Positions 1,583-58,022 of a DNA stretch of 64,000 nt are shown here, piece after piece. This stretch comes from Camelus ferus (lineage: Eukaryota). Below the pieces are notes generated by a model. That model was not told the DNA's origin. It ran no database searches and worked only from the letters and a program-made list of their open reading frames with translations. Both the position numbers and the translations under genes were made by a program. Location: the NCBI RefSeq assembly GCF_009834535.1, contig NC_045732.1, forward strand, positions 43,338,001 to 43,402,000, in the 5' to 3' direction. How positions within the stretch are numbered: the first letter of the stretch is position 1; every line of letters begins with the position of its first letter.

Positions 1583-1890
1583 CACCCACCAAGTTGGGCA
1601 TCATTGAACTGGCACTTGGGGATATTTTTAGGAGTTAGAGGGCAGTTTGAGGGTAGAGTAGGGTCTGTTGGAAGGAGGATTCGGGGTGAAGGTGAGAACC
1701 TGGTGGAAAGTTTAGTGATGAAGTTTCAGGATCGATAGCATGGTTTTGGGATATAATTGAAGGCTGATGGGTATAGTCTGGGATGCAGTTTGGGGGCCTG
1801 TTTTGAGGTCTGGATGTCAGATGGATATTACGAGTTGTAGTTGAGGAGTTATTAGTGGGTGATTTGGGGGAGCAGTTAAAGATCATTGGA

Positions 1891-3099: not shown

Positions 3100-3850
3100 G
3101 CAGTTTGGGGTACTGCTCGGATGTTCGTGGCGGGGTGATTTGGGGTGAGGGGCGCAAGTCTGATCACTGAGGGGGCGTGGTCTCGGTAAAGAAGAGCTCC
3201 TCGGCCTTCGAGAAAGCGTGTGCGCACGCGCTCTGAGCTGGTTCGCTCCTGGCGCTCCCAGGGCAGGGAAATCGAAGACCCGAACTGGCGCCTGCGCACT
3301 TGGTCTCCGCCGCTGCTGTGGTCTCGCGCCCCGCCCCCCGTCTCCCCCCGCCCCTCCAGGCTCGCGCTCAGCGGCGGAGGTGGCGGTGCCGCCTGGAGCG
3401 GACAGACCCGAGTTGAAGGTGGGGGGGGCCGGGGTCCACCTCCCGCCGCCGAGCGGGCGCCCCTCTTCCACCCTGCCTGTGCCCCCCGTCTGGCCCCCAC
3501 GGCTAACAGTCGCGCGGCCGAACGCGGCCCACAGGCGGGGCGCGGAAGGGGAGTAGGCAAGAGCCCGGGGACGAGCCGGGGGCAGCGAGGGACGGGCGCG
3601 CCCACCACCCCTACCGGCCTGCATCGACCCCGCCTACGCCGCTGGGCGAGGACCCTCGGTGAGTAATGCCCGCCTGGGGTTGGAAGGGAGGAGACGGGGC
3701 GGGGTGAAGGCCCGGAAACGCCGACCAGGGATGTACCTGCGCGCGCACCCGCGACCTCTGACCCTGTGGTCTCCCTCTCGACCCCTGCCTGACCTGAGTA
3801 CATCTTTCTTTAATCTCGGACCCCGGACCCCAGGACGTCTGGTCTGACCC
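3100..3850 (+). promoter_or_regulatory. CCDC120: CpG-island promoter and non-coding first exon of CCDC120
   Basis: CpG-dense, GC-box-rich stretch. Donor-like CG|GTGAGT after 3658. It is the only CpG island upstream of the CCDC120 coding exons in the window. Confidence 0.7.
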
Positions 3851-6082
3851 CTAACCCAACCATATTCTGGCGTGATGTGATTCTCAAACCCCGTTTTGCA
3901 CCCTCTAAATCCAGTCCTGACCCCAAACCCCGTACAGTTCTGTTCTTAGGATCCTTGACCTGACCCCAGATGCTTGCCTGACCCTGTTCTATCTCTGAAG
4001 CTCATCTTGCCTTGTCTTGAGCACCCGTTTCGGTCCTGTTTCTAAACTCTTGTCCAGTCCCTGAACCCCTTCCTATCCCCCTAACCCCAGTCTGATCCAG
4101 GTTGCCTTGATTCCTGACCTCTGACTTCTGTATTTTCTCCCCACCCTGTACTATCTCACCGGTCCCCCTCCTGATTCCTGAACTCCATCTTGGCTTACCA
4201 GCTTTAGACTGTCCCTCTTGTCGCCTGCCGTGCCCCTGCCCCTAACCTATGCTGTTTTCCCTTGTCTTCTGTCCCACCACTGTCCTTGTTCCTGTCTTCA
4301 TTCTGTCCCGGTCTTTTCCTGTTCCTTACCTCCATCTTGAACCTGCCCTTTTCCCTATCCCCTTCTTTGACCGCTGTCTTGGCCTGTCCCCCGTCATGTC
4401 TCCTGACTACTGTTTTATACTGACCCTGTTCCCTGCCCTGCTCTTTTGTCCCCTACTGTCCCCTACTTTTTCTCTGGCCCTTGTCCTGAGCCTCACTCCA
4501 TCCCATCCCCTGGCCAGTGTCCTGGCTCCTTCTCTGTCTTGCCTCCTGACCTCCATGCTGCAATGACTCTGATTCTGTTTTGTTCCCTGTACTCCTTCCT
4601 GTCTTGTCCCTTCATCCTGTCCCTACCCCAGGCCCCTGTTCTACCCTGTACCATGCCCCTCCATGCTGTTCAGATTTCCCTCCTTTGTAACACCCACTTT
4701 CCATCTCTGAGCCCAGAAGGAAAGGGGCCCCATTGTACCCTGCATTTGAACTTGGAGGTTCCCATGATCTCTGAAATTCATCCCAAATGCTTCTCTTAGC
4801 ATGAACAAGAGCAAGCAGCCTTATGGGCCCTGCGCAGCAGAGGGAGTTTTCACATGTGATTCCCCCACCCCCCACCCCCACCCAGTGAGCTCACACAGGG
4901 CTTGCATTTCTCTCCCTGTCCCAGGAGGGCCTGGAACTGGTCCTATGCCCCCCACCCTCCCCAAGTGTGAAAGAACACCCTGAATTATTCAGTGAATCTC
5001 TGGGAGCCTGTGAGGTCCGGGTCATGTTTCCAGCCTTGCTAGGTTGGGGGCTGTCCATGTAAGAGTGGGGGACTCAGGGGTATGTGTGAAACTTCTAGGA
5101 CATCTTACCCCTATCTGCTAGTCTTGGCACTAGGTGCAGTGATCCCTGTTTTCCTGGCCTGAAAAAAGTCCATTCTAGGCCAGAGGGTTCAGGGCTTGGT
5201 AGGGGTAGGAGTGGGGTGGGAGTTTATCCCCTTTCTCAGCAATAAGCAATACAAATCTTGGTGCTAAGTCCATCCCACCTCTGTGGGGCAGGTCTGTTGT
5301 TGGGGGGCTATCACTGTTAGAATCAGGCCCATCCAGTGGTGACAATAACAACCACAAGAAAAATAAGAAAAATACGGAGTTCTTTCACTATCTGAATCTC
5401 CTTGAGTTTGAGGACAGACAGGGAGAATTTGGATGGTGAGGAGGTAACATGTCATTCAATTATGTTTTGTTCCTGTGTTTCTCATTGAGAGTAGTGAGAG
5501 TTGGAATAACGAGATACCAGACCTATCTCATTTATCCAAAGCCTTTATCCAGACCTCTTCATAACAACACAAGCATCCCACACTGTCCCAGTATATTTGG
5601 TACCCAAGTTCTGAAAGGGAGAGTTTGGATAGTTCAGGCAGTGAAAGATATTAAGTTATTTGGGGGTATATTTTGTTTTTGCATTTTACAGAGTGAGTAG
5701 GGAGAGTTCAGATAATGAGGGATAATGGCTCTAACTCAAAAATGTATTCAAATCTATTCATTTCCCTGTGCTCCAGTGGCAAGAGTTGGGATTAATAAGG
5801 GTATCATGTTGTAGAAATGTACTTGGTTCCTGTATTTTGCCTGGTGAGTAAGGAAAGCTCAGAGAGTGACGGATATACCAGTCCTATCTCATAAATATAT
5901 CCAAATCCATTCAGTTGCTGTATTTGGATAGTGAGAGTTTGGACAATTCTTCTGAATAGATTTGGTTCCTGTATTTTTGGTTTTGAGTAGGGAGGGGTTG
6001 GATAATGAGGGAAAACAGCTCTGTTTCAAGTATGTCTAGGCAGCAAGTAGGGAGGGTTTCAAGGCTGAGAGATGCCACCTTT

Positions 6083-6385: not shown

Positions 6386-9300
6386 CTTGTTAGCCCTACA
6401 GGAGGCCACAGGAGGCTCAGGTCCCCACTGGGGAGGGGCTTAGAGGTGGCCGTCCTCCAGGGTATTAAAAGTTGTGGACTAGGGCAGTGATGTGTGTGGG
6501 TGACTCTGCCCCACCTATCTGCCTGGCCCAAGAGGCCCGGTTACCTGCTGTTCCCTCCTTCCTCTTGAACCAGCCCACCTCTGCATGAGTTTGTGATTGT
6601 AGTTACTAACGGTCGTTAATAACGTGGTGTGAGTTTCCTTGCACTTTGAGATGTCTTCCAAAGTTACTTTGGCCTCTGTTGGCTCTGTTAGTACTGTTTA
6701 CCAGTTTTACAGTTGAGGAAACCTCAGCCTTGAGACTCAGTTGACATTGCTGGCCAGATACCCTTTCCCTCTTGGCTCTAATTTTATAAACACCCCTCTT
6801 CCCAACGTCCTTGGTGTCCCTTAAGAGATGAGCGAGGCCATGGCTGAGAAGACACTCCCCACCAACCCCCAGCTGCCCACCTCGTGGCTGCTGCCTCCAC
6901 CAGCCGCAGGCAGTGAGAGGAGGGAGAAGGAGGGTGATGAAAGGGGCCTTTGTGTCCCATGCAGGAAATCTCACACCCAGGAAGAAAGGTGGGCAGGGTG
7001 GCAGGAGGCCTCAATAGCACATACACTGGGCGTTGCTTGTACAGAGCAAGTTCCTCTCCAGGCTTGGCCCCCCTGCCAAGTGGTGAGGGAGCTTTCCTTA
7101 CTCTGTGCTTTCGCATCATGTGTGGGCTGCCGGGGCCTGGGTTGGGCTCGGGCCCTGAGGTCACAGAGCAGATGGTCCCAAATGGAGCGCAGGATGTGTG
7201 GTGTGTGTTGGGGCCGGCCCAGAGCCCAGGTGGTGGTGTGGGGGAAGCAGGACCTCGTAGAGGCTCAGAGTCCTTCATTTCCTTGACTCTTGGCCAGAAA
7301 TGTCCCAGGAGCATAGGGAGAGGACTGGGAGAGCCTCAGCCTGGATGTGAAGAAGCATGAGCCCCCGTGCCCACTCCTCCTGCCTTGCAGGGATTGCCTC
7401 TGTCAGCCTGCAACCCAGGACCCAGCCCCCCCGAATTCTGATTCTACCTGCTCTTATGCCTCTCTGGTCAGAATCGGGCCTCTTCACCTCTGCAAGCCCC
7501 AGCTTTCATCTCTACAAGCTGGCTATGAGGAGCTGGGGCCGTGCCACCCTCCCAGGTTTGTAGGGGTCAGGAGGGATTAAATCGCCTGTGTGTGTCTTCC
7601 GTTCGCTGAGATGATTTCTTCTGGAGCTGCAGAAGGTGGTAGGGTCTTGAGACATGTTCTCCTTAGAAAAGGTAACCTCATATGTTCCATCTTGGGGAAC
7701 TTCTACCCCAGTGAGGGTAGGATTTGCCCTAAGACCTTCTCCCACCCCTTCCTTGCCCTGGGAGGAAAGGGTAGGGGCCTCAGAAATGTGATGAGTGTTG
7801 CCAAGAGACACACACCCAATGAACACCCAAGGCCTCCTGTGTGCCTAACAACTCCCCAGACCTCCATCCCTCAGCCCCCAAGTAGTTCCCTTGGGTGGCC
7901 AGGGTCTGATCTGGGCGCTTGGGCAGCACCAGAGGCAGCCGCTGCTCCCATGACCCTTAGCCCTTCTTCGTCTGTCCTCTTCTAGGTGTCTGGCAGGGAG
8001 GGGGGAGGTCAGGCTCTCTTCTTGGCCTTGCTGGACACCCTGAGGGGACCAGGCCCCAAGACTGCCCCTAAGGGTGGCCTGAGCCCTGGTGGCAGGCAGG
8101 CAAGGGTTAAAAGGTATGGGCCGGCCCAGTCCCTGGCCAGGTAGGCTGGGCCATCGCCTAGTGGGAGGCGGCCTAGGCATCCGCCACTGTGCTCACCCCT
8201 GCTCACTGCCACTATCAGCCGGAGCAGGGCCTTGTCGAGACGACTATTTTTTTTTTTTTGAGGTACCTGAGGCCACTCCACAGCACCTCTCTGGCATTGG
8301 TGAGCACCTGGGAACAGTGGGCCCAGGGCGAGGGGTGTGGGGAGAGCAGTATGGGGTGTACTGAAGTTCCCTGTAGGAGAGACCCAGGTCTGTGCGAGAG
8401 GCACGGCAAGGAAGGAGGGCCTGAGTAGAGGGGCGAAGCCCAAAATGTCCAGTTTCCTTTCCTGGCACGAGGCCGATCCCTTGCCGGAAGTGGACAAGGG
8501 GAAGGGATGGGGGAGAAGAGAAGCCAGAGTCCTCCTTCTCCACTCCCCTACTTCCTCTCCCCCTTTCTCCCCTGCAGGGGTACCTCATGCCCTCCTTCAA
8601 CCCGGGGCCCAGCCCCCTAGGAAAGCCCCCCATACTGGGCTCTTGAGAAACTACATCCGGCACCTGCCTGCCCCCCATCTGTTCCCCTGGAGTGGGGACG
8701 GAGGGGCTCTAGGGCAGTGTGGGGAACAGTGCCAGACACTGGGAGTTTGTATTTGCTCTGAAGGTGGCAAGATGTGGAAATGGGGGTCCACTGAGGTGTT
8801 GGGGTGCCACCCAGGTGAGGTGTCTCGGTTGTAAACAGTCATTACAGCCAGGAATTTCTTTCTGGGCTGTGGTGTCAGAAGGGCAGACCTGAAAAACCTG
8901 CTGGGCCCGCCTCTGGGTGTGGGGGGGTGCCCTCTGCAGCTCTCTTGCTGCAGCCCATCCTGGGACAGGACGGGGACACAGGGTCACCGGTGGGGAGACC
9001 CATGGGCTGGTGTAGGGGTGCATTGTGGAGGGGACTGCTGGGATCCCCCTTCTCACCATCTTTGGGTGGGGACCGGGTGGCCCCAGGCCCCCAGGCAAAT
9101 GTGCAGAGGGTAGGCGAGCAGAGGCAGAGGCTTAAGAGCGGGTGTGGGGGTGTGGGGCGTTGACCCTGTGTCTAGCCTGCCCGATGACCCCATGACTCAG
9201 GCCCTAGCTATGTCCCCGAGGTCAGGCTGACAGGGTGGAGTCGGGGTTCCTGTCTGGACCCCATGTGGACTTCCAGGATGCCATGAGCTCCCAGGGAAGG

Positions 9301-10825
9301 AAGGCTCAGAGCAGCCTAGTGTGGGATGTGGGACTGATCCTGGTGAATGGGCCCATTGGGGAGGAGTTGAGGTTCCTGTCGGGGTGGAGGAAGGTTTAGG
9401 GGGGCCCTGGGAGAGTTCCTCAAACCCAGATTGGGGCTGGGGAAGAAAGAACCCCAGGAGCTGAGGGTCAGAGGAGGCTAAGCTAGGACCTCAAGGAAAC
9501 CCTGCCATGCTGGGCAGTGTCAGCTCTTGGAGGGTGGGCATGTGAGCCCCTCTGCCGAGCACATGCTGTTGCCTGCATGTTCAGAAGGGCTTTAGGGATG
9601 GACCCTGCCCCTGATGTTGGGGACAGGGAACCCCTGCCTTGTGGGAAGGCTACAGACCCAATGGGGCAAGTGGGAGGACTGCTGATACCAGTGGTACCCT
9701 GTTAATAGCTTGGCCACATCCCCCAATATACAGATGGGGAAGGGGCTTGAACTCACGCTACCTCAGCTGCCTAGGTCTTCTCCACACCTGGCCACCATGT
9801 CATGACAAGCCGGGGATTTCGAGGTTGGTGGGGATGGGACCTCTGTGGCCTCATGAGATCCTCCCAATCGCCTGCCACCGAGGTCAGGCCAGGTGGTGGG
9901 AGGTGATGTCACCTGGCTTCCCAGCTGGGGACTGAGCAGGATGTGGGAGGGAAGGAGCAAACTCCAGAGGAAGGGACGAGGGCAGGACTGGCGGCCAGCC
10001 AAAGCAGGCTCCACCGCCAGCCAGGGCGTCTGGGGGCAGAGAAGGAGGCAGGAGGCAGTCAGCTTGTTATCTGCAACTGCGGACTTTGCCGTTTTCAGTC
10101 CCAGTAGGGTGACTTCCCCTTGCTGGATGCAGGACACGCTAGGGTGCGGGGAGGGACCGGAGGGGTCCTGAGGCCAGGAGAACACTCTCCCTGCCACACC
10201 AGGGACGCAGGATGGTGTTAGGACAAGTAGTGACCCACAGACCACAGTCATTCTTTTGTTCACCCAGCAGACATTCACTGAGCACTTGCTGTGTACACAG
10301 AAGTGTTCCGCGTGCCAGAGAAAAAGACTGATGAGAAAAGGACAGATACGTTTTCTGGCCTCCTAAATGTACAAGAGAGGCACAGTCTCTTGTTGGACAG
10401 CAGTTGTGAGGGGACATAATGCAGGGACCCACCTCTGGAAGTGACATCGAAGTCCCAGGGTGTGAGTGAGCGCCAGGGGCTGGAGTGGTGAGACGTGAAG
10501 AGAGGGCCCTGGACAGCAGCCACAGCTTGTGCAAAGTCTGGAGGCCTGCTGAGCTGTGAGCTTATGAGGAATTGGTGGGGTTCAGCACCTCTAGTAAGGG
10601 AGAGTGTTGGACCCTCAGCTGTGGGCAGGTGATTTCCTTTCTCTGTGTCTTACTCTCTTCGTCTCTAAAATGGGGTTATAATAATCACAGAACTGGCATC
10701 ATAGGGTGGTTGTGAAGATTAAACGTGGCATAGGAGTTACCTATTCCAGTAGTTACCTATACCTTAATAAATGCCCACCGTTCTTATCGTTGGTTGAATC
10801 CATGCCATTCATTTTCCCTTCCTAG

Positions 10826-10868
10826 GCAAGACTGCTGACTGTGGCCCATGGGCCTCTGAGGAGGCGTT
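10826..10868 (+). other. CCDC120: Candidate upstream exon of CCDC120
   Basis: Pyrimidine tract plus CCTAG| acceptor and TT|GTAAGT donor; 43 nt. The next candidate acceptor is TCCTCAG| at 11069. Confidence 0.5.
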
Positions 10869-11133
10869 GTAAGTCCGCCCGGCTCCCCACTTGCTGTGCT
10901 CCCACTCAATGGGAAGGGAACCAAGGTACCAGGGCCTTGACATTGACACAGATTCTGAGAGGGCAGACCAAGCAGGTGGGTGGGGCCAGGGTACCCCTCA
11001 TTTGCAGCTGGGGTGTGGGAACCTGGGTCTGGGTGGAGATTGGGGGATCAGGGGATGTGCTTCCTCAGTGGCTCCCGTGCATCACTGCCAGGCCTTGCCC
11101 AGCCATCAGCCACGGCCTCTTGACAGCACCAGG

Positions 11134-14100
11134 ATGGAAGTCAAAGGTCAGCTGATCAGCTCTCCCACCTTCAATGCCTCAGGTCGGTGTTGGGTTCCCT
11201 CTCCTGCTGCCTCCTCCCCAGCTCTGAGTCACCTCCTGTCCGCTTGGGAAGGGTTGGTCCCTGGCCCCACCGCTGCTCCAGGTTGCCCCAGTTGTGCCCC
11301 TGATCTTTGTTCCCTCTGTGTCCAGCTGCCCTGTTTGGAGAGGCTGCCCCCCAAGTGAAGTCAGAGCGGCTCCGGGGGCTGCTTGACCGGCAGCGGGCCC
11401 TGCAGGAGGCCCTGAGTCTGAAACTTCAGGAGCTACGAAAAGTGTGTCTCCAGGAGGCGGTGAGGGCCTGATCCTAAGGGTGTTGGTGTTGGGGTGAGGA
11501 GCCGGGGCGAGGTAGGCAATCAGGTGGTGATCACTGAGCCACTTGTCTGAGCTGTAGATTCTCCAAAGCTCAGCTCAGATGTCTTAGAATCAACAAAATA
11601 TGGTAATATTTTACCACAACCCCCTGTCAATAATTTAGAATCCAAAAAACCTCAAAAAAACAAACAAACAAAAAACCCTCACATAAGTTATTTCCAAAAC
11701 TTGGCAGTGAAACCTGATCTGAACTGACATAAGGTGATTTATAGTTTCGCTTTACCCCTCTTGCTGTGACTGTCCACACAGTTTGCCAGAAATAATAATG
11801 CAGTTCAGAGCATGCAGCCCAGGCCTCAAAGAGTGTCATATAATATGTAGTATAAAGATGGTGTCACCTGTATGAAAAATGAAGAAATTCCGGATTCCGA
11901 AGCAGGTCTCCCTGCTTCCCATGCCCACTGCCCCAGGGATTTGGGCCAACGAGGGGCTGAGAGTCTGTTCCATACACCCGCCCAGTGGAGTACTGGGAGG
12001 AGGAAGAGAACAGGTGTGGATGCCGAGTAGGGCTGGGGTCCTAGTAGGACTTCTGTAGATTCAGGCTGCTTTGCCACATCCTCCCCAACTAATCCTGTAG
12101 TCTCTGACATATGCCTTCGTCCACCCAGGAGCTGACTGGCCAACTGCCCCCAGAGTGCCCACTGGAGCCTGGGGAACGGCCCCAGTTGGTCCGCCGGCGG
12201 CCCCCTGCAGCCCGAGCCTACCCTCCACCACACACCAACCCAGCACACCACTCCTTGTGTCCCGCTGAGGTGAGCAGATGGGCACACAGAGCAAGATGGG
12301 GGTGGGACAGGTACAGGGGAGGAGGAGCCGGGAGGAAGCAGAGGGCAGGCTGTGTCCAGGGGAAGGAGAGGCTAAGGGAAAAAGGCACCGAGCTTGAGGG
12401 AGATGGGTTCCAGGACTGAGAGAGAGGATGCTGGTCCCTAACTGTCAGGATCGGCTTTTCACCCTTGCTCCCCCACCCCCCACCCCAAGATGCATAGGCT
12501 CAGCCCGAATCAACCCAGGCCCTGCCTCCAGTGCATCCTGGCTTTGCCACCACCTGCTTCCTATGCTTGACCATTTCTAACATTTTGGTCCCACTCGGGT
12601 GGGCCCCGCAGGAGCTGGCGCTTGAGGCCCTGGAGCGCGAGGTGTCAGTGCAGCAGCAGATTACGGCAGCTGCCCGCCGCCTGGCCTTGGCCCCCGAGCT
12701 GAATGCCGAGCAGCGCCGGCGTCGGCGCCAGGTCCAGGCAGATGCGCTGCGGAGGCTGCATGAGCTGGAGGAGCAGCTCGGGGATGTCCGGGCCCGCCTG
12801 GGCCTCCCGGTGCTCCCGCCGCTCCAGCCCCTGCCACTGTCCACCGGCGCAGTTATCACTGCCCAGGGAGTCTGCCTGGGCACACGCCTCACTCAGCTCA
12901 GCCAAGGTGAGCCAGGCCCTGTCACCCCACCAGTGAAAGCCGGAGGGTGGGCATGGTAGGGGTGGGGTGTGTGAGCAGCCAGTGAAAAGTGGGAGGGAGG
13001 TGGAACTTAAGGAATTATGATTAACTGACTCTCGGGCAAGGGTGGGGCCACTGGGAATAGGCATCAGGGAAGTGAGAGATCAAGCCCCTGGTGATCTTAG
13101 ATTTAGATAAAGGTGGATTCTTGGGAAGCAAAGGGGGTGGGGAGGAGACTGCCCAGTGGTGTAAGGGGATGGCACCCAGGCTTTGTATTGATAGGCCCGG
13201 TTCTCCCCCTTCTCACCTGTAGAGGACGTAGTTCTGCACTCAGAGAGCAGCTCCCTCTCAGAGTCTGGGGCCAGCCATGATAACGGTGAGGACCTGTCTC
13301 TCCCAAATCTGCCCATCCTTTGATGCTCAGCCCTCACCTTCCCTCTTCAGCTCTTTTGAGCCATGCCCCATCCTCCTGTGGAACCCCCATCTTCTTTGCT
13401 TCACCCTATCCTGCCCCATCAGCCCCAGTTCTCACCTCATCCTTCAGCTCCTCCTCAGCCTGTCCCGCCCTCTGCCCCCCACCCCCCGCCTCCCTAGTCC
13501 CCACCCTTTGCTTTGCCTGCAACCCTTCGGGTACCCTCTCATTGACTTCTCCCCTACTTTCTCCATTCCACCCAGAGGAGCCCCGTGGCTGCTTCCCTCT
13601 GGCTGAGCGCCCCTCACCACCCAAAGCCTGGGACCAGCTGCGGGCAGTATCTGGGGGCAGCCCTGAGCGGCGAACCCCATGGAAAGCACCCCCGTCGGAT
13701 CTTTATGGGGATCTGAAGAGCCGGCGGAACTCTGTGGCCAGCCCCACCAGGTGAGGGTGAGCCCCTGCCCTCCTTCCCCAGGAGCCAGGAGTGGAGCCTA
13801 AGCCTGGGCTGGCAGGGGGGCCCACTGGTGGTTACAGTCTCTAACCTGGACCCCCACCTGGNNNNNNNNNNNNNNNNNNNNNNNNNNNNNNNNNNNNNNN
13901 NNNNNNNNNNNNNNNNNNNNNNNNNNNNNNNNNNNNNNNNNNNNNNNNNNNNNNNNNNNNNNNNNNNNNNNNNNNNNNNNNNNNNNNNNNNNNGAGGGTG
14001 AGTTTGAGGACCAGAGGAGGGAACTAGTAGCTCTAACTGGGGGTGTCAGGGAGAGCATTATCAAAGGGTGTGGGGCATGAGAGCCTGAGCTTTGAGTCTA

Positions 14101-48500: not shown

Positions 48501-49603
48501 GTTCCTTCACAGCTTGGGACAGCATTCCATCCGCCAAGACCTCAGGATGTATGGATGGTCCAGGGGCCTGGGTGGGTGGCTGCCTGCGATGGCCATTCTG
48601 GATCAAAGGGATGACAAGTTCCTTGGGGGCTTCTGAGGGCTTCACACTGATGTGGACACAGAGGGGTGAAGTTGGGGAAGCAGCACGATCAGTGGGTTCT
48701 GAGCCATACCCCTTCATTCAGGGGAAAAACACAAGAGCCAAACTCACCCTCAGCCCCAAGTCACTCAACCCCTCCCTTCTTCTGTCTGGCTCTCCTGTTA
48801 GGTCGCTGGTGAGGCTTTCTTTGGATTCTCTGCCCCACCCTCAACTTAAATATCAATGCTTCTGAGGAACCGGTCTCAGTTCTGGACCCTCTATTCACCC
48901 CAAGACCCACTTCCATGGTTTCCACAATGACCTACAAATCACCATCTTCAGCCTGGACTCTTTCCCCAGCTCCAGGCTCCACACCAGCCTCCTGGATGGT
49001 TGATTCTCTTCTGGAAGTCCCTGTATCAGGCTCTCCTTTCCCAATTAAGCTGATGGGGGTCTCCTCCAACCTGAATCTGCCGCTCCATCCCGCTTGCCAT
49101 ATTGGACAAGCCCCACCGCTTTAGCTGGGACACTAGGAGTCCTGTCATTCTCCCCTCTTTCCCTTTTTCAGAACGCAGGCTCCTCAGGGCCCCCCAAGCC
49201 CTAAAGACACTCCCTTTCAGGATTATATCCTCTCCTTTCAACCCCTAGGGTCAACAGGTCCAATTTCCGCCCCCCTCTCCTACTAACTCCCGCCTTCTCG
49301 CTTCCACGAAATTTCCTCACGCAGTGCTTTAGGCTTTACAGGCCACTGTCACCAAGACAATCAACTCTGATTCCACTCTCCCGCAGGCACCCACTGCACT
49401 GGTTTCCAACGGACGAAAGACCCAGCGCTTCACCTCTGTAGCTCTCTCCCTTCCACGGTCTTCAAGAAATCCTTATCCTCCGGAGCCGCACCCGCGCCGT
49501 CTCCCGCCAGCCGAATCCGGGCAGATACTCGACTGAAGCTGAATGAAATTGGGACACTGGAGGCTCTCGCCGGCCGCAATATACCATCTTCAGCGTCCGC
49601 CAT
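42597..49603 (-). CDS. GPKOW: G-patch domain and KOW motifs-containing protein (splicing factor, Spp2 homolog)
   Basis: Exons 49603-49434 (MADAEDG...), 48646-48492, [exon 3 in N-gap 48265-48404], 46419-46310 (G-patch [18 protein letters not shown]), 45519-45309, 44926-44794, 44129-44006, 43802-43679, 43586-43517, 42911-42826 and 42731-42597 (TGA). Phases are consistent. Confidence 0.96.
46560..48130. mobile_element. L2 fragments in GPKOW intron 3
   Basis: CATTCAGTCC..TTTGACAAATATTT, GAGAAATGCTGGTGGCTCAGACCAG and related L2 motifs. Confidence 0.65.
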
Positions 49604-49830
49604 CTTGCCCCTCTTCCCAGGCCGGAGCGCTGCTTGATGGGAAGTTTAGTTTGTTCTCACTTTTCCGGGGGGCGGACCACGAGCGCTAGAACTACTTTAC
49701 CCGTGAAACACTGCGGCACTGGTGGTCAAAGGCTAAGGGGCCATAGGAAGTAATTGCCGCTCTTTTTACGTCACAGGAGAGCGTGGCGCCAAGCATACCG
49801 GGAAATGTAGTTCTTGGAGGAGGTAGGCTT
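49595..49830 (-). promoter_or_regulatory. GPKOW: GPKOW promoter
   Basis: YY1-like CCGCCATCTT overlapping the ATG (49597-49606), GGGAAATGTAGT (reverse complement ACTACATTTCCC, ZNF143/THAP11 motif) at 49800-49811, and TTACGTCA CRE-like site. Confidence 0.65.
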
Positions 49831-50048
49831 GATAGAAGGTGGGTTCGTTCTTGCCAAGTATTGATTCCTTCCTGTAGGCGTTTACTGTGTGCTCGTTATT
49901 CTGCCCTACTGGTGTGGGAAGTGTAGGTAACAAAAGTCATTAAGAGAAACATCTGTGAGTGCCAGTTGTGTACGATAATAAAAAATAGACATGTAAATGG
50001 TGCCTACACGTGACAGATTTAATACTGGACAAATTCTGGATTCAGATA

Positions 50049-50253
50049 CAGTTGATCCTTGAATAACATGGTTTGAACTGCAAGGGGCCACTTATATGTG
50101 GGTATCTGTCACTAACTACCTCCTACAGTACTGCATGATGCAAGATTGGTTGAATCCAAGGATGTGGAACATGGAGGGGAGACTAAAGTTATATGGGGAT
50201 TTTAGACTGCACTGGGTCGCTGCCCTAACCCCCCTTTGTTCAAGGGTCAACTG
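50049..50253. mobile_element. Tigger-family MITE (Tc1/mariner)
   Basis: TIRs CAGTTGATCCTTGAA (50049) and TTCAAGGGTCAACTG (ends 50253), flanked by TA on both sides. Confidence 0.85.
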
Positions 50254-50999
50254 TATTAATAAAATAGAGGGGCCTCCTCTCTAGAGGCTCCTACTCCAGC
50301 GGGGATCAATGACACTTAAATGGATATTAAAACAAAAACAAAAACAAAAGCAAAAACAATTCCTACCAACTTTAAATATGTCGTGAGAGCCAGGTCCTAA
50401 GGCTTCAGAAGATTAATGAGATAGACTCCTCTTGTGTAGGACCTTAAGAGACTGATACTTAAATAGTCATAAGAAAGAATACTACAAATCTGCTAAAAAT
50501 TCTTCCCAAGGAAATCATCGAAGATGTGCAAAAAAAATTTATACAAGATTCATCAGAGTATTATTTATTGTAGCAAAAGCTTGAAGACCACTTAAATGAA
50601 CAACATTAGGGGATGGGCTAAATGAGTTATAGCACATGGCTTGAATGGAGCAAATATACTAGAGCCTTTAAATGTGAAAGTATACATATAATTAAATGAA
50701 ATGGGACATAGTAACAATGTTTGGAAAGCAGAATAGTACAGTGGCTCAGAGGATGGTCTTGAAAACAGGAAGTCCAATATTCGCAACGTTCACCTACTGC
50801 AATAACCCTCTCTGTGTCACCTCCTAGAGGAATATTCTAGGATAACCCCAGCCGCCTCGAATCGCCGCCGAGCCCCGCCCTCCCAACTCACGCCCATGGG
50901 CCCCACCCAGCGGAGTAACTAGCAATCCCGGGCCCGCCACCTCAGAACCCAGCGCCACTCCGGCCACGCCCTCCAGGAGGCCCAGCCCCCATCACGCAC

Positions 51000-51851
51000 C
51001 CTCCTTGGGGCGCAGGCGCAATGAAACGCCGGCCCTGCGAACCAGCGCCGCCACGTCGGCCGCGGCTCGGGCCGCCAGGGGGCGCGCGTCCAGCCGCGCC
51101 AGGAGCTGCCGGGCGCTGGGGCCCGCGGGCGGGGAAAGGCCGCGGCCTGCGCGAGTGAAAAGAACAGATCAGCGCCCACCCTGAGCCTCAGCGAGCCACC
51201 ACACCCCCGACGATCGAAGACCTAGTATGCCCCTCAAGATCCCCGGGGACCGAGACCACGCCCTCCGTAGTTCCAGAGGTCGCCGACTGTCCCTCTCACC
51301 TCCCGCGATCCCCGACCATCGCGGGTGTGCCCGTGGACCCCCCGCCTGGCCCCACGATATCCCTGGAGATAGCTGTTTAACCTCAGTACTCCTGGACACC
51401 TCCGAACACCCCGCAAATACCTCTGGAGGTCTCCGACTGCCCCCTTGTAACCCCGGACTACAAACTCTCCTCCCCAATATGGAGAGGGACCTAGATTTCC
51501 CCCAGATGTCCCGACAGAACACGGTCTGCCCCCCACCCCAGTGGCCGCGGCACCCCCGAGTCCCATTCCAGATATCCTAGGCAACCCTGACGGCCCACGT
51601 GGCCCCAGAGTGCCCCCTCCACACATCCCCAGAGGCCCCCGCCTCACCCCCCAAAATGCACCACAGACCCTGAGTGCCCAGGTGTCCCCAGTGACCCGGG
51701 CAGACCCCTCTGACACATCTCCCCCGAGATTCCCGAGAGCCCCCGGGTCTGGTGCGCTGCCCCGCAGCGCGGGTGTGGGTGCGGGTGCAGGTAGGGGGCC
51801 TCGAGCCCAGCCCCGGTCGCTGGGCCCCTGCCCTCTACGGCCGCCGCCCGC

Positions 51852-51882
<31 letters not shown>

Positions 51883-52044
51883 TTGGGCGCCAGGGCTGCT
51901 TTGTTTACCACCTGTCGGAAGGAAAAGGTGAGGAGCAGACAGGCGGGGCGAGGGCTGGCAGGGACGCGCCCGCTCCCTCCCCCCCGCCCCGTACCTCCTC
52001 TGCTCCGCCTAGGGTCCGCGGCGCCCCCCCGCAAGCCGCTCCAT
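51000..52044 (-). pseudogene. MAGIX: Truncated 5' copy of MAGIX (exons 1-2 only)
   Basis: Exon 1 52044-51995 (ME..GGAADPRRSRG, with a +1 in a C7/G7 run). Exon 2 51146-51000, 147 nt, GRGLSPPAGPSARQLLARLDARPLAARAAADVAALVRRAGVSLRLRPKE with AG/GT, recognisably MAGIX exon 2. No exon 3 follows; the GC-rich intron ends near 50850. Confidence 0.75.
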
Positions 52045-52733
52045 GACCAGGAGTCGGCGGGGTGGACGCACGGCCGCCAGCGACGCGTTTGGAGCGCCCG
52101 GGCGCGCTCACCTGGCGGCCCGCCCGGGCCTGGACGCGGCTGAGGCCGGCCGGTCCCGTGCCCGGCGCCCCGACCAGCGCCGTGACCTACCTGGCGGCCG
52201 GCAAGGAGGCCAGGCTGTGGGAGCCAGCGCGAGCGCTTGGCCTCGCTCTGTCTCAGGCGCTGCCTCTGTTTCCCAGGACCGTGGGAAACCTCTTTCCACC
52301 CAGGGGATGTTGTTACTCCTCTGGTGAGAAGGGGAAGTCGAGGCCCAGACAAGTTAAGGGCCCCACCTGAGCTCTGACAACTACCAAGGGGATCCAGAAC
52401 CCGAACCCAAGTTTACCACGGTGTTCTGCCGCCTCCAACAGAGGTTTGCACAGCCTAGGCACTCAGTAACTTTGCAGTGAATGCTTGCCTCAGCTGGTCC
52501 CTACTGGGGAACTGGAAGAGTGTGGTGGGCTGGGGAGGGTGGCGCCCTTGGAGCCTTTGGGGTCCATGGGAGGCTTGGAGGCCCTGAGCAGGATAAGGTT
52601 TGGGGACTCAAAAAGTAGGGAGGGGCAGGCCCCCTGGAGAAGGAGGGGCGGTAGGGGCCTGGACTTGAGGAGGCTTTGAAGGCACGTTGGTGGGAGGGGA
52701 CGCCAGCCAGTGAGAGGTGAGAAATGAGGTCCT
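51709..52733 (-). repeat. Inverted repeat, left arm (MAGIX promoter/exon 1/part of intron 1)
   Basis: Manual reverse-complement alignment to 53993-55016: identical from ~52261 to ~52727, with one mismatch at the inner boundary. The remaining differences are 1-2 nt indels or swaps in the most GC-rich part. Confidence 0.93.
51852..51881 (+). repeat. (CCG)10 in MAGIX intron 1, left arm (mirror at ~54841-54885)
   Basis: Direct count. Confidence 0.9.
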
Positions 52734-53992
52734 TTCTAGGTTTGAAAAGGGGTGGGGTATCCGGAGCTGAAGGCCCAAGTGGGAGAGTGATTTGCACAGT
52801 GCTACTATAGTGGAAGGACGAATGGGGTGCAGTGAGAGAAGGTCTGTGGCCACCATTTTGTGGAGGAAGAAACTGAGGGCAGGAGGGGCTCAGGGCCCCA
52901 TAGCCAGCCAACAATAGCCCTGGATTTGGCAGCTTACTCCGCACACTTCCTTGGTCCAGTTCCTGTTCCACTATGGGCTGTAGATGCACTGTGTCCTGAC
53001 ATCCATTCTGGCTGGGTGGACAGCCTCTCTCATCCACTTCGCAGGGTCCCAGTGTTGTGGTAGGTGAAAGGGCTGATTGTTCTCTGCTTTCATTCCTCCT
53101 GCAATCTCATGCCCCTCCCATCTCTGACCTGACCTTGTCTGAAGAGGGGCACACTGGACCTCCTTCCCTCCTCTGCCTTGTTCTCGTGGTGACTACATGG
53201 GGTTTTCACAGATCCCCAAATAGGCCCTCTGTTATTCTCACCTCCCTGCCTTTGCCCATGCTGTTCCTCTCCCTGGGAGGCCTTTTCCGACATTTGTCCA
53301 CCACTGCATGTTATCAAGGCCCAGTTCAAAGACTCCAATCGTCCATTCTTCTCTTTCTGAAACAAAGAAAGAACACATGTTCATATGCAGATGGTGTATG
53401 TTTGACTATGAAGAATTGTAAACCAAAGTGCTTCTGTCTGTGGGGAAGAGTCCAGGCTGATTTATTTTCCTAAGTCTTCCCAAGAAAATTCGGTTGAGGA
53501 GAAAAACCAAGGCTGAGACCTAAGCATCCATGTCCTCTCCTCCATTAGGAAGCCTTGCCTCTCTCTCCTCTAGGGCCCAGTCCCCTCTCCCTCCCCCGGG
53601 GATGTCACCAATTATGCAGGGCAGTGCCGGTCACCGGGATCATTGGCCTCTGGTCGTCTGCCTGCCTGAACTGGGATCTGCTGTGTCCCTCTTGGCTATC
53701 CCTGGAAGTACAGCTGATGTGTGAGCTCCCAGGATCCCCAGGAGAAGATGCCCGCATCTGCCCACCTTCTCTTCGAAGAATCCAGGATGCTTGCTTTGTA
53801 TAATGCTATGTAAACTTCTTACCTATGGCTTGTGGAAGGAGAAATAAGCCAACACTGGCACAATTATTATTCCCTAATTTTATAAATTAGGAAACAGAGG
53901 CCCAGACAAGGTAACTTACTCTCTGCCTGGCTCTGTTCTTATTGAGACTTCGCGCACTGAAGATGGAAATGTCAGCTTCTAATCTGGCGTTC

Positions 53993-55016
53993 AGGACTTC
54001 ATTTCTCACCTCTCACTGGCTGGCGTCCCCTCCCACCAACGTGCCTTCAAAGCCTCCTCAAGTCCAGGCCCCTACCGCCCCTCCTTCTCCAGGGGGCCTG
54101 CCCCTCCCTACTTTTTGAGTCCCCAAACCTTATCCTGCTCAGGGCCTCCAAGCCTCCCATGGACCCCAAAGGCTCCAAGGGCGCCACCCTCCCCAGCCCA
54201 CCACACTCTTCCAGTTCCCCAGTAGGGACCAGCTGAGGCAAGCATTCACTGCAAAGTTACTGAGTGCCTAGGCTGTGCAAACCTCTGTTGGAGGCGGCAG
54301 AACACCGTGGTAAACTTGGGTTCGGGTTCTGGATCCCCTTGGTAGTTGTCAGAGCTCAGGTGGGGCCCTTAACTTGTCTGGGCCTCGACTTCCCCTTCTC
54401 ACCAGAGGAGTAACAACATCCCCTGGGTGGAAAGAGGTTTCCCACGGTCCTGGGAAACAGAGGCAGGCGCTGAGACAGAGCGAGGCCAAGCGCTCGCGCT
54501 GGCTCCCACAGCCTGCCTCCTTGCCGGCCGCAGGTAGGTCACGGCGCTGGTCGGGGCGCCGGGCACGGGACCGGCCGGCCTCAGCCGCGTCCGGCCGGGC
54601 GGGCCGACCAGGTGAGCGCGGCCCGGGCGCTCCAAACGCGTCGCTGCGGCCGTGCGTCCACCCCAGCCGACTCCTGGTCATGGATGGCGCTTGCGGGGGG
54701 CGCCGCGGACCCTAGGCGGAGCAGAGGAGGTACGGGCGGGGGGGAGGGAGCGGGCGCGTCCCTGCCAGCCCTCGCCCCGCCTGTCTGCTCCTCACCTTTT
54801 CCTTCCGACAGGTGGTAAACAAAGCAGCCCTGGCGCCCAAGCGGCGGCGGCGGCCGGCGGCGGCGGCGGCGGGCGGGCGGCGGCCGTAGAGGGCAGGGGC
54901 CCAGCGACCGGGGCTGGGCTCGAGGCCCCCTACCTGCACCCGCACCCACACCCGCGCCTGAGCGGGCAGCGCACCAGACCCGGGGGCTCTCGGGAATCTC
55001 GGGGAGATGTTTCAGA
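53993..55016 (+). repeat. Inverted repeat, right arm (ends at N-gap)
   Basis: Reverse complement of 51709-52733; homology continues up to the first N at 55017. Confidence 0.93.
54680..54729 (+). CDS. MAGIX: MAGIX exon 1 in syntenic orientation (rest of gene not visible; 100-N gap follows intron 1)
   Basis: ATG at 54680/54684, (M)ALAGGAADPRRSRG|GTACGG donor; same strand as PLP2, as in human. Confidence 0.55.
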
Positions 55017-55116
55017 NNNNNNNNNNNNNNNNNNNNNNNNNNNNNNNNNNNNNNNNNNNNNNNNNNNNNNNNNNNNNNNNNNNNNNNNNNNNNNNNNNNN
55101 NNNNNNNNNNNNNNNN
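55017..55116. other. Assembly gap of exactly 100 N (likely unknown size)
   Basis: 4+60+36 N counted; the three exon-associated gaps have irregular lengths (132, 156 and 140 N). Confidence 0.9.
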
Positions 55117-55299
55117 CTCGCCGAGAGTGTTAAATAATGTACCTTACACGCACTGTTTTCTAAAATCCAAAATATTCGGAATTCTGGAAACGTACTGGAG
55201 TTTAACCCTGGCCTTGGCCGTATTTACAACTAAGGAAACTGAGGCATTCCCCCTCCAAAGCGAAATCCCCACGGTTCTGAGTTGAGGCAGCCCCAGGCG

Positions 55300-55647
55300 C
55301 GTTTGTATTCTAAAAGCGTGAAAGATCTCTCCATTGCAACACATGGCACGCAGAACTGCCAAGCCTCAGAGGCTGGCGGTCCCGGAGATAGAGCGCCCTG
55401 GGGGGCTGTGCGCCGGGCGGGGAGTATCCTAGGCGGGCGGGGCGAGGGGGCTTCCGGGGCGGCAGCCACCTGGCCCGGCCTGCTTCGGCCCCGCCCGCTT
55501 CTACTCCGCGCGGTGATTCACTCCCTCCTTCGCCCCGGGGCCCCCTTCCCGGCCAGACGGCGGGCAAGACTGCTGGGTGTGCAGCGTCCTCGAACGCACG
55601 AGCAAGCGAGCAGATCCTCTGCGCCCCTACGGGCTCCGGTCCACGCC
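55300..55647 (+). promoter_or_regulatory. PLP2: PLP2 CpG-island promoter / 5' UTR
   Basis: CpG-rich with GGGCGG boxes immediately upstream of the Kozak GCCATGG. Confidence 0.65.
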
Positions 55648-58022
55648 ATGGCGGATTCCGAGCGCCTCTCGGCCCCCGGCTGCTGGGCCGCCTGCACCAA
55701 CTTCTCGCGCACCCGAAAGGGGATTCTCCTGTTTTCTGAGATTGTGAGCGTCCCGGGACAGGCGGGTGGGCAGAGGTGGGTGGGGTGGCTGGACCACGCG
55801 GATCCGGACAGCCCCAGGGGAGGCAGGCGCGTGGTGAGGGGCTCTGCGCCGTGGGGCGCGGGGTGGGTAGATTGGTGGCGGAGGCCCGAAACCAGGGGCG
55901 CAGGGCGGGTCAGTGAAGTTTGAAGGTGGTTGGGAGCTGCTGACCCACGGGGTGAGACAAGAGGCCCATAGGGCATTTGCGGGGCCCCGTGGAGGGATAC
56001 CCGGTGGACTCATCCAAGGGGTCCCCACGGGCTGGGAGGTGGAGGAGGGTCTCCCGTGACAGGGCGTGGTGCGGCCTGGGCACTGGCGGGCGGGCTGGCA
56101 GAGCGCCCAGGGGCGGGACCTCTTGGGGTGGGGCCCCGCGCGCTAGTCCCGTAGGGCAGGGCGATCCGCCCTTCCCAAGTTCTTCCTCGCCCTTCTGTGG
56201 TGGGGCGGGAGGTGTTTAGATATTTGGGCCGCTTGGAAACCTCGGCTTATCGCCCCTCTCAAAGTGGGCGCCGTTTTTGAGTCACTTGTAAAAGGGGTGC
56301 GGCGCCTTTAACTGAGCCCTGCCCCTTCGGTGTGACACTCACCGCTTCTCAAAGGGGTTGCCGGGGGAACCGCACGTCCCGCCCCGTCAAAAGCCCTGAA
56401 GCTGGTGCTGGCAGTGCTTACAAAAAACACCTGAAGGCACCACTCTCCGAAGGCTGCCACTATTCCAGAAGGGAAAAGGGGAGAAACTGATGCGCACAAC
56501 CCTATCCCTTACTAGTTGGGTGACCCTGGACAAATCACTTAATGTCTGTCTCTGTGCCTCCCTTTTCTCATCTATAAGATAAAGACGCTACTAATAGTAC
56601 ACAGCTCATTAGGTTGTTGTGATGACTGAACGAATTAATACTTGTACAACTCTTAGAACAATATGTGGAATACAGTGTGCACACAATAACTGTTTAGCTA
56701 TTATTATTTGCCATCTTCCCAGTCCTGGTAGGCATCTGAGTCTGAAACTCCCAATTTAAACCAATCTTCTCCGCCCTGGGAGTTGATGGAGGTCCCCTTT
56801 CACGTGTCATTCTTCCAGATACTGTGCCTGGTGATTCTGATCTGCTTCGGTGCCTCAGCATCAGAATACTCTTTCCTGTCTGTGATTGAGATGATCTTTG
56901 CTGCCATCTTCTTTGTCGTCTACATGTGTGACCTGCACACCAAGATACTGATCATCAACTGGCCTTGGAGTGTGAGAAAGGGGCCACAATGGCCAGGCTA
57001 GGGAGGGGTCTGGGAAGGTGGTATTGTAGAGGGAATTCTGGATACTGACTTCTCTTTTCTCCCTGCACATCACAGGATTTCTTCAGAACCCTCATAGCAG
57101 TCATCCTCTACCTGATCACCTCCATTGTTGTGCTTGTTGAGAGAGGAAACAACTCCAAAATTGCCGCAGGGGTAAAGGCTGTAGAATCTGCTTCAAAGCA
57201 TAGAGAGAGGGGTTTGAGGATCCTGGGGCCATTTCTGCCTCTGCTTCTGCCAGGAAGTGTGTGACCTACAGTAGGTCACCTTTGTCCTCAGGGTCTGCAG
57301 GAAACTCTGACCCAGGCCCTGTTTTTTCTCCCCAAGTCGTATTTGGTGTAAAGGGGCATCCCTTGTCCAACATGGGGACCTTTGTGTGAAGCACAAAGAG
57401 GTGGCCCCTTTGTCATCACGCTAGACTACCATCTGCTAAAGCTTTGTCTCACTGTACAGTATGAATGGTTCCACCTATACGTGGGGCCACTGTGTGGCTG
57501 CACTGTGTTGAGAGGTACTAGGAAGAGGGAGGGTGGGGTACAGTTCAGTCTTCTGGCCTTTCCCTCGGGCTCTCTGGCTTCCCAACCTGGGGCTTTAGTC
57601 ACCACCCCTGTGTGGGGGCAGTCACTGGAGGTGGTGGATACCAGGAGGTAAGAGGTTGAGTAGGCTTATCAGCTTAATCCAACCCCTCTCATTCCCATCC
57701 CCATTCCAGGTACTGGGCCTAGTCGCCGCAGGCCTCTTTGGCTATGATGCCTACATTACCTTCCCCTTGCGGCAGCAAAGACATACAGCAGCCCCTACTG
57801 GTAAGTGTCTGTGTGTGGGAGGGGGTGTTGCTAAGAGGGCTGAGAAGGAAATGAGTCTTTCAAGGGCGTGAATGCCAACTCTGTCCCTTATTGGCACGTA
57901 AGACTTTATTGCCAAGAAGTATCTTAAGCTTCAGTAGTCTTATCTGTAAAATGGACATATGGATCCAGCCAATGCTTTCTCTCTTTTCCTCACTTGCAGA
58001 CCCTGCAGATGGTCCGGTGTAG
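55648..58022 (+). CDS. PLP2: Proteolipid protein 2 (MARVEL domain), 152 aa
   Basis: Exons 55648-55743 (MADSERLSAPGCWAACTNFSRTRKG), 56819-56971, 57076-57171, 57710-57800 and 58000-58022 (...PADGPV TAG); 459 nt. Confidence 0.97.

What the first reader, a model, noticed from the sequence alone, without database searches (positions are those of the whole stretch)
50850..55116. Back-to-back inverted duplication of the MAGIX promoter/5' exons around a potentially invertible 1.26 kb spacer
Seen: 51709-52733 is the reverse complement of 53993-55016. There is no N between 48405 and 55016, so both arms and the unique spacer (52734-53992) lie on one contig. About 470 bp of the less GC-extreme part are identical; differences cluster as 1-2 nt indels or swaps in GC-compression-prone sequence. 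The right arm stops only because the gap starts, so the true arm may extend to ~50850 (about 1.9 kb, including exon 2). Established: inverted repeats such as those flanking FLNA-EMD on X are homogenised by gene conversion and mediate recurrent inversion of the enclosed segment. Inference: recombination between these arms would flip the spacer, i.e. the upstream regulatory DNA of MAGIX, without touching coding sequence. That would be a polymorphic promoter-orientation switch. I cannot tell whether this is lineage-specific or an old eutherian repeat already catalogued.
Basis: partly seen in the sequence, partly recalled or inferred. Interest (0 to 1): 0.8.

Follow-up and report, generated by a model that had tools for sequence, protein, structure and literature searches.

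The report
Ancient X-linked palindrome at MAGIX
The inverted duplication of the MAGIX promoter and first exons is real: it is one copy of a small X-chromosome palindrome shared by camels, whales, deer, cattle, horses, carnivores and squirrels, whose two arms are kept nearly identical within each species and whose middle piece has flipped in some lineages.

Summary
Window 51709-52733 is the reverse complement of 53993-55016 (1012 of 1034 columns identical) around a unique 1259-nt spacer.

It is not an assembly fold-back. The same palindrome lies between GPKOW and MAGIX in blue whale, fallow deer, cattle/yak, donkey, grey seal, panda and, partly decayed, a squirrel. Its arms hold the MAGIX CpG island, ATG exon and exon 2.

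Arms are 99-100% identical within species but 66-83% identical to the window. The two arms pair by species in a tree, which indicates gene conversion. Whale and squirrel share the outer breakpoint within 2 nt, which points to one origin before the rodent/laurasiatherian split.

The whole spacer is inverted in seal versus panda and donkey, and in cattle versus deer.

- The left copy is a truncated copy facing GPKOW.
- The real MAGIX starts in the right arm and runs into the 100-N gap, which hides about 6 kb, including every exon from exon 2 on.
- The promoters sit in the arms, so they do not flip.

Most arm differences in this window are private scrambles of the gap-adjacent arm, probably consensus errors. 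I found no paper describing this palindrome.

The parts
50783..51708 (-). Outer part of the GPKOW-side (left) copy: start of MAGIX intron 2, a copy of exon 2 (coding 51001-51144, acceptor cag|GC at about 51147, donor G|gtgcgt just 3' of 51001), and intron 1. Its partner in the right arm is hidden in the gap.
   Evidence: tblastn of whale MAGIX P0069 matches residues 14-65 at 51156-51001, and no other exon anywhere in the window. This stretch is collinear with the arms of whale, deer, donkey, seal and pig down to 50783 in every species.
51709..52733 (-). Left arm as visible in the window. It holds the CpG-island core 51709-52260 (GC 0.77, CpG observed/expected 0.88), a (GCC)n run at about 51838-51879, and a copy of the MAGIX ATG exon (ATG 52044-52042, donor after 51995).
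   Evidence: At 23 of 28 differing columns this arm agrees with six other species.
52734..53992 (.). Spacer, 1259 nt, unique. Nearly all of it (from 52874 on) corresponds to 'segment A', the first 1131 nt of the whale spacer next to the whale left arm; its first 140 nt are arm sequence in whale. Its first ~417 nt are still part of both arms in donkey, seal and panda.
   Evidence: Window 50783-53999 is collinear with whale L007 2629-5794. In pig, 50783-53437 is one collinear block directly upstream of MAGIX.
53993..55016 (+). Right (MAGIX-side) arm, visible part: the promoter CpG island and ATG exon (about 54680-54732) of the true MAGIX gene, pointing into the gap. Its sequence is of low quality.
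   Evidence: It aligns forward to the MAGIX 5' end of every other species. It carries the private indels and base swaps and has the longer terminal branch, 0.010 against 0.0015.
55017..55116 (.). 100-N gap of unknown size. It hides about 6 kb: the rest of the right arm (intron 1, exon 2), all remaining MAGIX exons and about 3 kb of MAGIX-PLP2 intergenic DNA.
   Evidence: Flank-to-flank distances in seven species are 6.0-7.6 kb. No PDZ or later MAGIX exon is in the window.
49436..49603 (-). GPKOW coding exon 1 (context). It lies 1.2 kb downstream of the left copy on the same strand. The 49801-50782 stretch between them is AT-rich and looks LINE-like by eye.
55648..55743 (+). PLP2 exon 1 coding part (context). 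It shows that the window's + strand follows the GPKOW(-) / MAGIX(+) / PLP2(+) / PRICKLE3(-) order seen in the other mammals.

Best explanation
This is the camelid copy of an old X-linked mini-palindrome that lies between GPKOW and MAGIX.

Origin. Before rodents and laurasiatherians split, a segment of about 2.5-3 kb was duplicated in inverted orientation upstream of MAGIX, on the GPKOW side. The segment held the MAGIX upstream region, CpG-island promoter, ATG exon, intron 1, exon 2 and about 0.6 kb of intron 2.

Maintenance. Since then, intrachromosomal gene conversion has kept the two arms almost identical within each species while they diverged between species. This is inferred from the tree and the identities.

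Inversion and erosion. Crossing-over between the arms has inverted the intervening spacer at least once and probably twice: on the seal lineage after its split from panda, and on the cattle lineage after its split from deer. Deletions at the centre have shortened the spacer and eroded the inner arm ends. In this genome the spacer is down to 1.26 kb. Relative to whale, about 3.5 kb is absent, including about 140 nt of the inner end of the right arm.

Gene content here. The right arm is the working MAGIX 5' end, and the gene body is unassembled under the 100-N gap. The left arm is a truncated copy whose promoter and two exons point at GPKOW.

Arm differences. The 2% difference between the arms in this window is mostly consensus error in the GC-rich contig end next to the gap.
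For: The repeat itself.

Orthologous palindromes, all at the same place and in the same orientation:
- Whale L007: arms 2251-4655 / 9175-11578, 100% identical, spacer 4519 nt.
- Deer L008: arms 342-3284 / 8727-11458, 99% over the inner ~2.4 kb and 89% in the outermost 338 nt, spacer 5442 nt.
- Donkey L009: arms up to 1764 / 9092-10855, 100%, spacer 7327 nt.
- Seal L010: 419 nt visible, 100%, spacer 8426 nt (for deer, donkey and seal).
- Cattle and yak: 100%, spacer 895 nt.
- Panda.
- Squirrel: outer part 91-98% identical, inner part decayed.
- The loci read from whale, deer, donkey, seal, squirrel and cattle contain no N.

Concerted evolution: the two arms pair by species with 100/100 support in window, whale and donkey, 98/96 in deer, and 91/92 in squirrel. 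The tree otherwise equals the species tree.

Single origin: homology of the squirrel left copy ends at whale 11576, and the whale arm ends at 11578.

Inversions: seal versus panda, 6822 nt in 11 reversed blocks against 193 nt forward. Donkey versus seal, 3658 nt in 8 blocks, all reversed. Donkey versus panda, all forward. Cattle versus deer, 901 nt at 92.8%, reversed.

Gene orientation and the missing gene body.

Error pattern: at 23 of 28 differing columns the left arm agrees with six other species, and the right-arm changes are private indels or swaps of adjacent bases.

Camelid MAGIX proteins of 331 and 273 aa are listed in public annotation, so the gene exists in camelids (table; the sequences were not read).
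Against: - No second assembly or reads of this species were examined, so the exact spacer length and the 53992|53993 junction could still be an assembly collapse.
- Within 10 kb upstream of MAGIX no second copy was seen in dugong or sloth. The age beyond Boreoeutheria is therefore open.
- The pig locus was too short upstream to show its left arm.
- Segment A changing sides (GPKOW side in window, whale and seal; MAGIX side in donkey, panda and pig) can be explained without inversion, by loss of one copy of a former arm segment. The cattle state can also be reached by arm extension plus deletion. Only the seal inversion is unambiguous.
- Gene conversion is inferred from sequence patterns, not observed.
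Confidence: 0.88

Rival explanations
1. Assembly artefact: a fold-back or false duplication created when a GC-rich contig end next to a gap was assembled twice in opposite orientations. Only one MAGIX 5' copy would exist in the animal.
For: The right arm abuts a 100-N gap. The arm differences are indel- and swap-type and private to that arm. This was my leading idea.
Against: The same inverted copy, at the same place, in the same orientation and with similar extent, is present in eight other species. These include gap-free stretches of chromosome-level assemblies and two independent Bos assemblies. The left copy is joined without any N to GPKOW on one side and to conserved upstream DNA on the other.
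Confidence: 0.03
2. Independent, lineage-specific inverted duplications of the MAGIX 5' end arose in each species. This would explain why arms pair by species without any gene conversion.
For: A tree in which paralogues pair by species is also what recent independent duplications would give.
Against: It would need at least eight separate duplications, each landing on the GPKOW side in inverted orientation. The outer breakpoint of the squirrel left copy coincides with the whale arm end within 2 nt. The inner boundaries form a nested series at window-equivalent positions of about 53150, 52873 and 52733.
Confidence: 0.04
3. The palindrome is real, but the very short spacer in this window is an assembly collapse. 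The animal would then carry a whale-like spacer of several kb, and the 53992|53993 junction would be false.
For: Relative to whale, about 3.5 kb is missing exactly between segment A and the low-quality right arm. The right arm is error-rich. Draft assemblies often drop sequence near repeats.
Against: The contig is continuous across the junction. Spacer lengths vary naturally from 895 nt (cattle) to 8426 nt (seal). Deletions centred on the spacer are a described feature of X palindromes (PMC8327919). A 5-nt AGGAC match sits at the junction, as read.
Confidence: 0.15

Closest known systems
FLNA-EMD inverted repeats at Xq28 (Caceres et al. [quoted passage not shown]
   Same: These are X-linked inverted repeats flanking a unique segment, homogenised within species, with the enclosed segment found in both orientations across eutherian lineages (as summarised in PMC8327919; HsInv0389 is listed in PMC3961182).
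   Different: There the arms are about 11 kb and the inverted segment of about 47 kb holds two whole genes. According to PMC8327919, the repeat sequence is not orthologous in all species. Here the arms are 1-3 kb and orthologous in all species examined (the MAGIX 5' end), with an outer breakpoint shared between whale and squirrel, the two species compared. The spacer holds no gene, and each arm carries a promoter plus two exons.
Large primate X-chromosome palindromes P1-P26 (Jackson et al. 2021, PMC8327919)
   Same: Arm-to-arm identity is above 99%, attributed to gene conversion. Structural change is concentrated at the spacer and inner arms. The palindromes are conserved between species.
   Different: That catalogue required arms above 8 kb, which usually carry whole testis-biased gene families, and conservation was shown across primates. 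This palindrome falls below that size cut-off, carries only the 5' end of one gene, and is shared across at least four mammalian orders plus a rodent.
False duplications next to gaps in draft assemblies
   Same: One copy ends at a gap and is indel-rich.
   Different: The duplicate is reproduced in independent high-quality assemblies of other species, so the duplication itself is biological. Only the sequence errors in the right arm are an assembly matter.

Membership tests
Sex-chromosome palindrome in the sense of Jackson et al. 2021 | Inverted repeat arms longer than 8 kb | tested here: not met
   The visible arm is 1.0 kb in the window, and about 1.95 kb counting the left copy to 50783. Whale arms are 2.4 kb and deer arms 2.9 kb.
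Sex-chromosome palindrome in the sense of Jackson et al. 2021 | Arm-to-arm identity above 99% | tested here: inconclusive
   The raw figure in the window is 97.9%, but 23 of 28 differing columns are private to the gap-adjacent arm and look like errors. Whale is 100%, donkey has 1 mismatch in 943 nt, and deer is about 99%.
Sex-chromosome palindrome in the sense of Jackson et al. 2021 | Spacer shorter than 500 kb | tested here: met
   1259 nt here, and 895-8426 nt in the other species.
Inverted-repeat-mediated recurrent inversion (FLNA-EMD type) | Unique segment flanked by inverted repeats that evolve in concert | tested here: met
   The two arms pair by species with 100/100 support in three species, 98/96 in deer and 91/92 in squirrel.
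Inverted-repeat-mediated recurrent inversion (FLNA-EMD type) | The enclosed segment occurs in both orientations in a pattern that needs more than one event on the species tree | tested here: met
   Seal is reversed against panda, donkey, whale, deer and squirrel. Cattle is reversed against deer and whale. The cattle case has an alternative path without inversion, so 'more than one event' is probable rather than certain.
Inverted-repeat-mediated recurrent inversion (FLNA-EMD type) | Both orientations segregate within a species | not testable with these tools
   Only one haplotype of this species is available. Cattle and yak have the same orientation.
Assembly false duplication | The second copy is absent from independent assemblies and related species | tested here: not met
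   The second copy is present in whale, deer, cattle, yak, donkey, seal, panda and squirrel.

The most novel reading that the evidence does not exclude
The GPKOW-side arm may not be a passive copy. It would be a second MAGIX-type CpG-island promoter with two spliceable exons that feeds transcripts into GPKOW, which lies 1.2 kb downstream on the same strand. Selection on this shared promoter pair, and not gene conversion alone, would then explain why a palindrome of only 2-3 kb has survived since before the rodent/laurasiatherian split. Two hints: the longest annotated GPKOW products of blue whale (504 aa) and donkey (524 aa) begin inside the left arm. In whale the start is exactly at the mirror image of the MAGIX ATG (position 3829, mirroring 10001).
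Probability: 0.25. Interest if true: 0.75.

Novelty: new member of a known kind. Interest (0 to 1): 0.6.

Why it matters
Deeply conserved sex-chromosome palindromes are rare. [quoted passage not shown]

Here the arms are orthologous in every species examined. The outer breakpoint is shared between a whale and a squirrel. The locus also shows, in one place, the inner-arm erosion, a partly decayed state (squirrel) and clean whole-spacer inversions between fairly close species (seal versus panda). That makes it a compact natural system, small enough for PCR, for measuring gene conversion, arm decay and inversion rate.

For annotation of this genome there are two practical points:
- MAGIX is not lost or inverted in the camel; it is hidden under a gap of about 6 kb written as 100 N.
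- The minus-strand 'MAGIX exons' next to GPKOW belong to the truncated arm copy.

Tried and rejected
- My first reading (60% artefact) was dropped once the orthologues showed the same palindrome.
- Look-ups of cattle P0121 and pig P0047 MAGIX proteins found no locus, because only the longest product of a gene is on record. The pig left arm therefore could not be examined; locus L004 has only 1.3 kb upstream.
- Locus L002 (a Bos assembly) has N over positions 1-2988 and was uninformative.
- Dugong and sloth show a single copy within the 10 kb available. This is inconclusive, because spacers reach 8.4 kb elsewhere.
- Rfam found no RNA family in 49000-56500.
- Literature searches for MAGIX or GPKOW with palindrome, inversion or inverted repeat found nothing relevant. 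The chrX inversions of PMC3961182 lie elsewhere.
- Notes near this window in the scan's own index: none.
- An in-frame MAGIX-exon to GPKOW-exon-2 splice did not work by my hand reading of phases (MAGIX donors phase 1, GPKOW exon 2 acceptor phase 2). The whale and donkey long GPKOW models must therefore use another junction. I could not see it, because the GPKOW exons lie outside those loci.
- I did not fetch camelid (P0067, P0092) or human loci, in keeping with the operators' note on N stretches.
Full report
**1. The observation**

The repeat finder and a gapped local alignment confirm that 51709-52733 is the reverse complement of 53993-55016. Of 1034 columns, 1012 are identical, with 3 substitutions and 19 one-base gap columns. 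All indels fall in the GC-extreme part (51721-52259), and 52260-52727 is identical. The 1259-nt spacer 52734-53992 is unique. No N lies between 48405 and 55016. A 1-kb match of this quality is far beyond chance.

**2. Gene map**

Six-frame reading places the genes as follows:
- GPKOW is on the minus strand: exon 1 at 49436-49603, exon 2 around 48574-48645, and the G-patch and KOW exons further left.
- PLP2 is on the plus strand, with its ATG at 55648.
- PRICKLE3 is on the minus strand from 58677.

The only MAGIX coding matches are a copy of exon 2 at 51001-51144 on the minus strand (residues 14-65 of whale MAGIX) and the short ATG exon inside each arm (52044-51995 on the minus strand, about 54680-54732 on the plus strand). 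No PDZ exon exists anywhere in the 64 kb.

In cattle, yak, pig, whale, deer, donkey, seal, panda, squirrel, dugong and sloth the order is MAGIX(+), PLP2(+), PRICKLE3(-). GPKOW(-) lies on the other side of MAGIX in whale and donkey, the two loci that reach it. The right arm, which points into the gap toward PLP2, is therefore the true MAGIX 5' end. The left copy is a truncated duplicate that faces GPKOW.

**3. The gap**

The two flanks are not continuous. Position 55010 aligns to the MAGIX CpG island, and 55117 onward aligns to sequence about 0.5 kb upstream of PLP2 exon 1. In other species these two points lie 6.0-7.6 kb apart (whale 6065, deer 5981, cattle 6098, donkey 6359, seal 6385, pig 7619). 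The 100 N therefore stand for roughly 6 kb: the rest of the right arm and all MAGIX exons from exon 2 on. I estimated the size only and read no letters for the gap.

**4. Real or artefact**

At I favoured an artefact, because the copy abuts a gap and the differences look like errors. The orthologous loci overturned that reading. All of the following carry an inverted copy of the MAGIX 5' end on the GPKOW side:
- Blue whale: arms 2251-4655 / 9175-11578, 100% identical, spacer 4519 nt.
- Fallow deer: 342-3284 / 8727-11458, 99% over the inner ~2.4 kb and 89% in the outermost 338 nt, spacer 5442 nt.
- Donkey: up to 1764 / 9092-10855, 100%, spacer 7327 nt; the arm is cut by the end of the locus.
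- Grey seal: 100%, spacer 8426 nt.
- Cattle and yak: 100%, spacer 895 nt.
- Giant panda.
- A ground squirrel: outer part 91-98% identical, inner part decayed to about 67%.

Window 50783-53999 is collinear with the whale left arm plus the first 1.1 kb of the whale spacer, and the window's right arm is collinear with the whale right arm.

**5. Concerted evolution and a single origin**

I built a maximum-likelihood tree of the 1-kb arm segment from 15 sequences. It pairs the two arms of each species with 100/100 support in window, whale and donkey, 98/96 in deer and 91/92 in squirrel. Otherwise it reproduces the species tree.

The window branches at the base of Cetartiodactyla, which is the position of camelids.

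Arms are 99-100% identical within species. The arm copies of other species are 72-83% identical to the window, and the decayed squirrel left copy 66%.

Independent duplications are unlikely. Homology of the squirrel left copy ends at whale position 11576, and the whale arm ends at 11578. I infer one duplication before the rodent/laurasiatherian split, followed by continuing gene conversion. Dugong and sloth show no second copy within the 10 kb available, which is inconclusive.

**6. Spacer history**

Pairwise spacer alignments give two orientation classes for the core spacer:
- Whale, deer, donkey, panda and squirrel share one orientation.
- Seal and cattle have the other.

The key comparisons are:
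- Seal versus panda: 6822 nt in 11 reversed collinear blocks, against 193 nt forward.
- Donkey versus seal: 8 blocks, all reversed.
- Donkey versus panda: all forward.
- Cattle versus deer: 901 nt at 92.8%, reversed.

On the accepted species tree this needs one inversion on the seal lineage and probably a second on the cattle lineage. The cattle state could also arise by arm extension plus deletion.

The window's spacer consists almost entirely of 'segment A'. This segment sits on the GPKOW side in window, whale and seal, and on the MAGIX side in donkey, panda and pig. Its first ~417 nt are still within both arms in donkey, seal and panda. Segment A therefore looks like a former arm segment that different lineages kept on different sides.

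The inner arm boundary has moved outward in steps, at window-equivalent positions of about 53150 (donkey, seal, panda), 52873 (whale) and 52733 (window). Relative to whale, the window lacks about 3.5 kb: the core spacer plus about 140 nt of the inner end of the right arm. One central deletion explains this. Central deletions are a described feature of X palindromes (PMC8327919).

**7. The arm differences in this window**

I aligned both arms with six other species. At 23 of 28 differing columns the left arm agrees with the others. The right arm has private one-base indels or swapped neighbouring bases at positions that are invariant elsewhere. Its terminal branch is about seven times longer. 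This is the signature of a poor consensus at a GC-rich contig end, not of divergence. True arm identity is probably at least 99.5%.

One exception is a run of 7 G in the left arm at about 52030, where the other species and the right arm have 6. Read literally, both arm copies of the ATG exon reach a TAG after 11 codons. I cannot tell whether this is a homopolymer error or a real change.

**8. How it works**

Shown:
- The structure itself.
- Its orthology across species.
- Arm pairing by species.
- Orientation differences of the spacer.

Inferred:
- Gene conversion as the homogenising process.
- Crossing-over between the arms as the cause of the inversions.
- A central deletion in the camelid lineage.

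Because the CpG-island promoters (GC 0.77, CpG observed/expected 0.88) lie inside the arms, a flip does not change promoter orientation. It only changes which arm segment A adjoins.

A possible function for the left arm is an upstream alternative promoter for GPKOW. The longest GPKOW products annotated in whale (504 aa) and donkey (524 aa) start inside the left arm. In whale the start is exactly at the mirror of the MAGIX ATG. This is a hint from computed gene models only.

**9. Comparison with what is known**

The closest parallels are the FLNA-EMD inverted repeats and the large primate X palindromes (PMC8327919; PMC3961182). This palindrome is smaller than the 8-kb cut-off of that catalogue. 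I found no paper that links MAGIX or GPKOW with a palindrome or an inversion.

I file it as a new member of a known kind. It is notable for its depth of conservation with orthologous arms.

Noticed in passing
window 52044-51995 (-) and about 54680-54732 (+): Read literally, both arm copies of the MAGIX ATG exon hit a TAG after 11 codons. The left arm has a run of 7 G where six other species have 6. The right arm has 6 G plus an extra T and swapped bases, so the net length is the same. This is either a homopolymer or consensus error, or a real +1 change in the camel exon 1.
   Followed up: partly
L007 1-3829 (-) and L009 1-1114 (-): The longest annotated GPKOW products of blue whale (504 aa) and donkey (524 aa) begin inside the left palindrome arm. 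In whale the start is exactly at the mirror of the MAGIX start codon. This suggests chimeric 5' exons for GPKOW.
   Followed up: partly
window 49801-50782: An AT-rich stretch (GC 0.39) between the GPKOW promoter and the left copy looks like LINE and other repeat fragments by eye. Homology of the left copy to every other species stops at 50783, which is 378 nt short of the whale arm's outer end. The left arm is therefore truncated here.
   Followed up: partly
window 51838-51879 and 54841-54884: A (GCC)n/(CGG)n triplet run of about 10 units lies in intron 1 of the MAGIX 5' region, in both arms.
   Followed up: no
L012 2779-5908 and 9763-11724: The squirrel palindrome is half decayed. The exon-2 side of the arms is still 91-98% identical, but the promoter side of the left copy has diverged (about 67% between arms, GC 0.48 against 0.63).
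   Followed up: partly
L003 449-766 and 2422-2784: Ruminant SINE-like (Bov-tA type, by eye) insertions lie in and next to the cattle arms. One lies inside the arm, so it is present in both copies at 100% identity. This shows that insertions spread between arms.
   Followed up: no
window 55017-55116 against the other ten gaps: Only this gap is exactly 100 N; the others are 132-467 N. An earlier first-stage note on the same chromosome reports another palindrome arm hidden under a 100-N gap. In this assembly, 100-N gaps may often mark unresolved inverted repeats.
   Followed up: no
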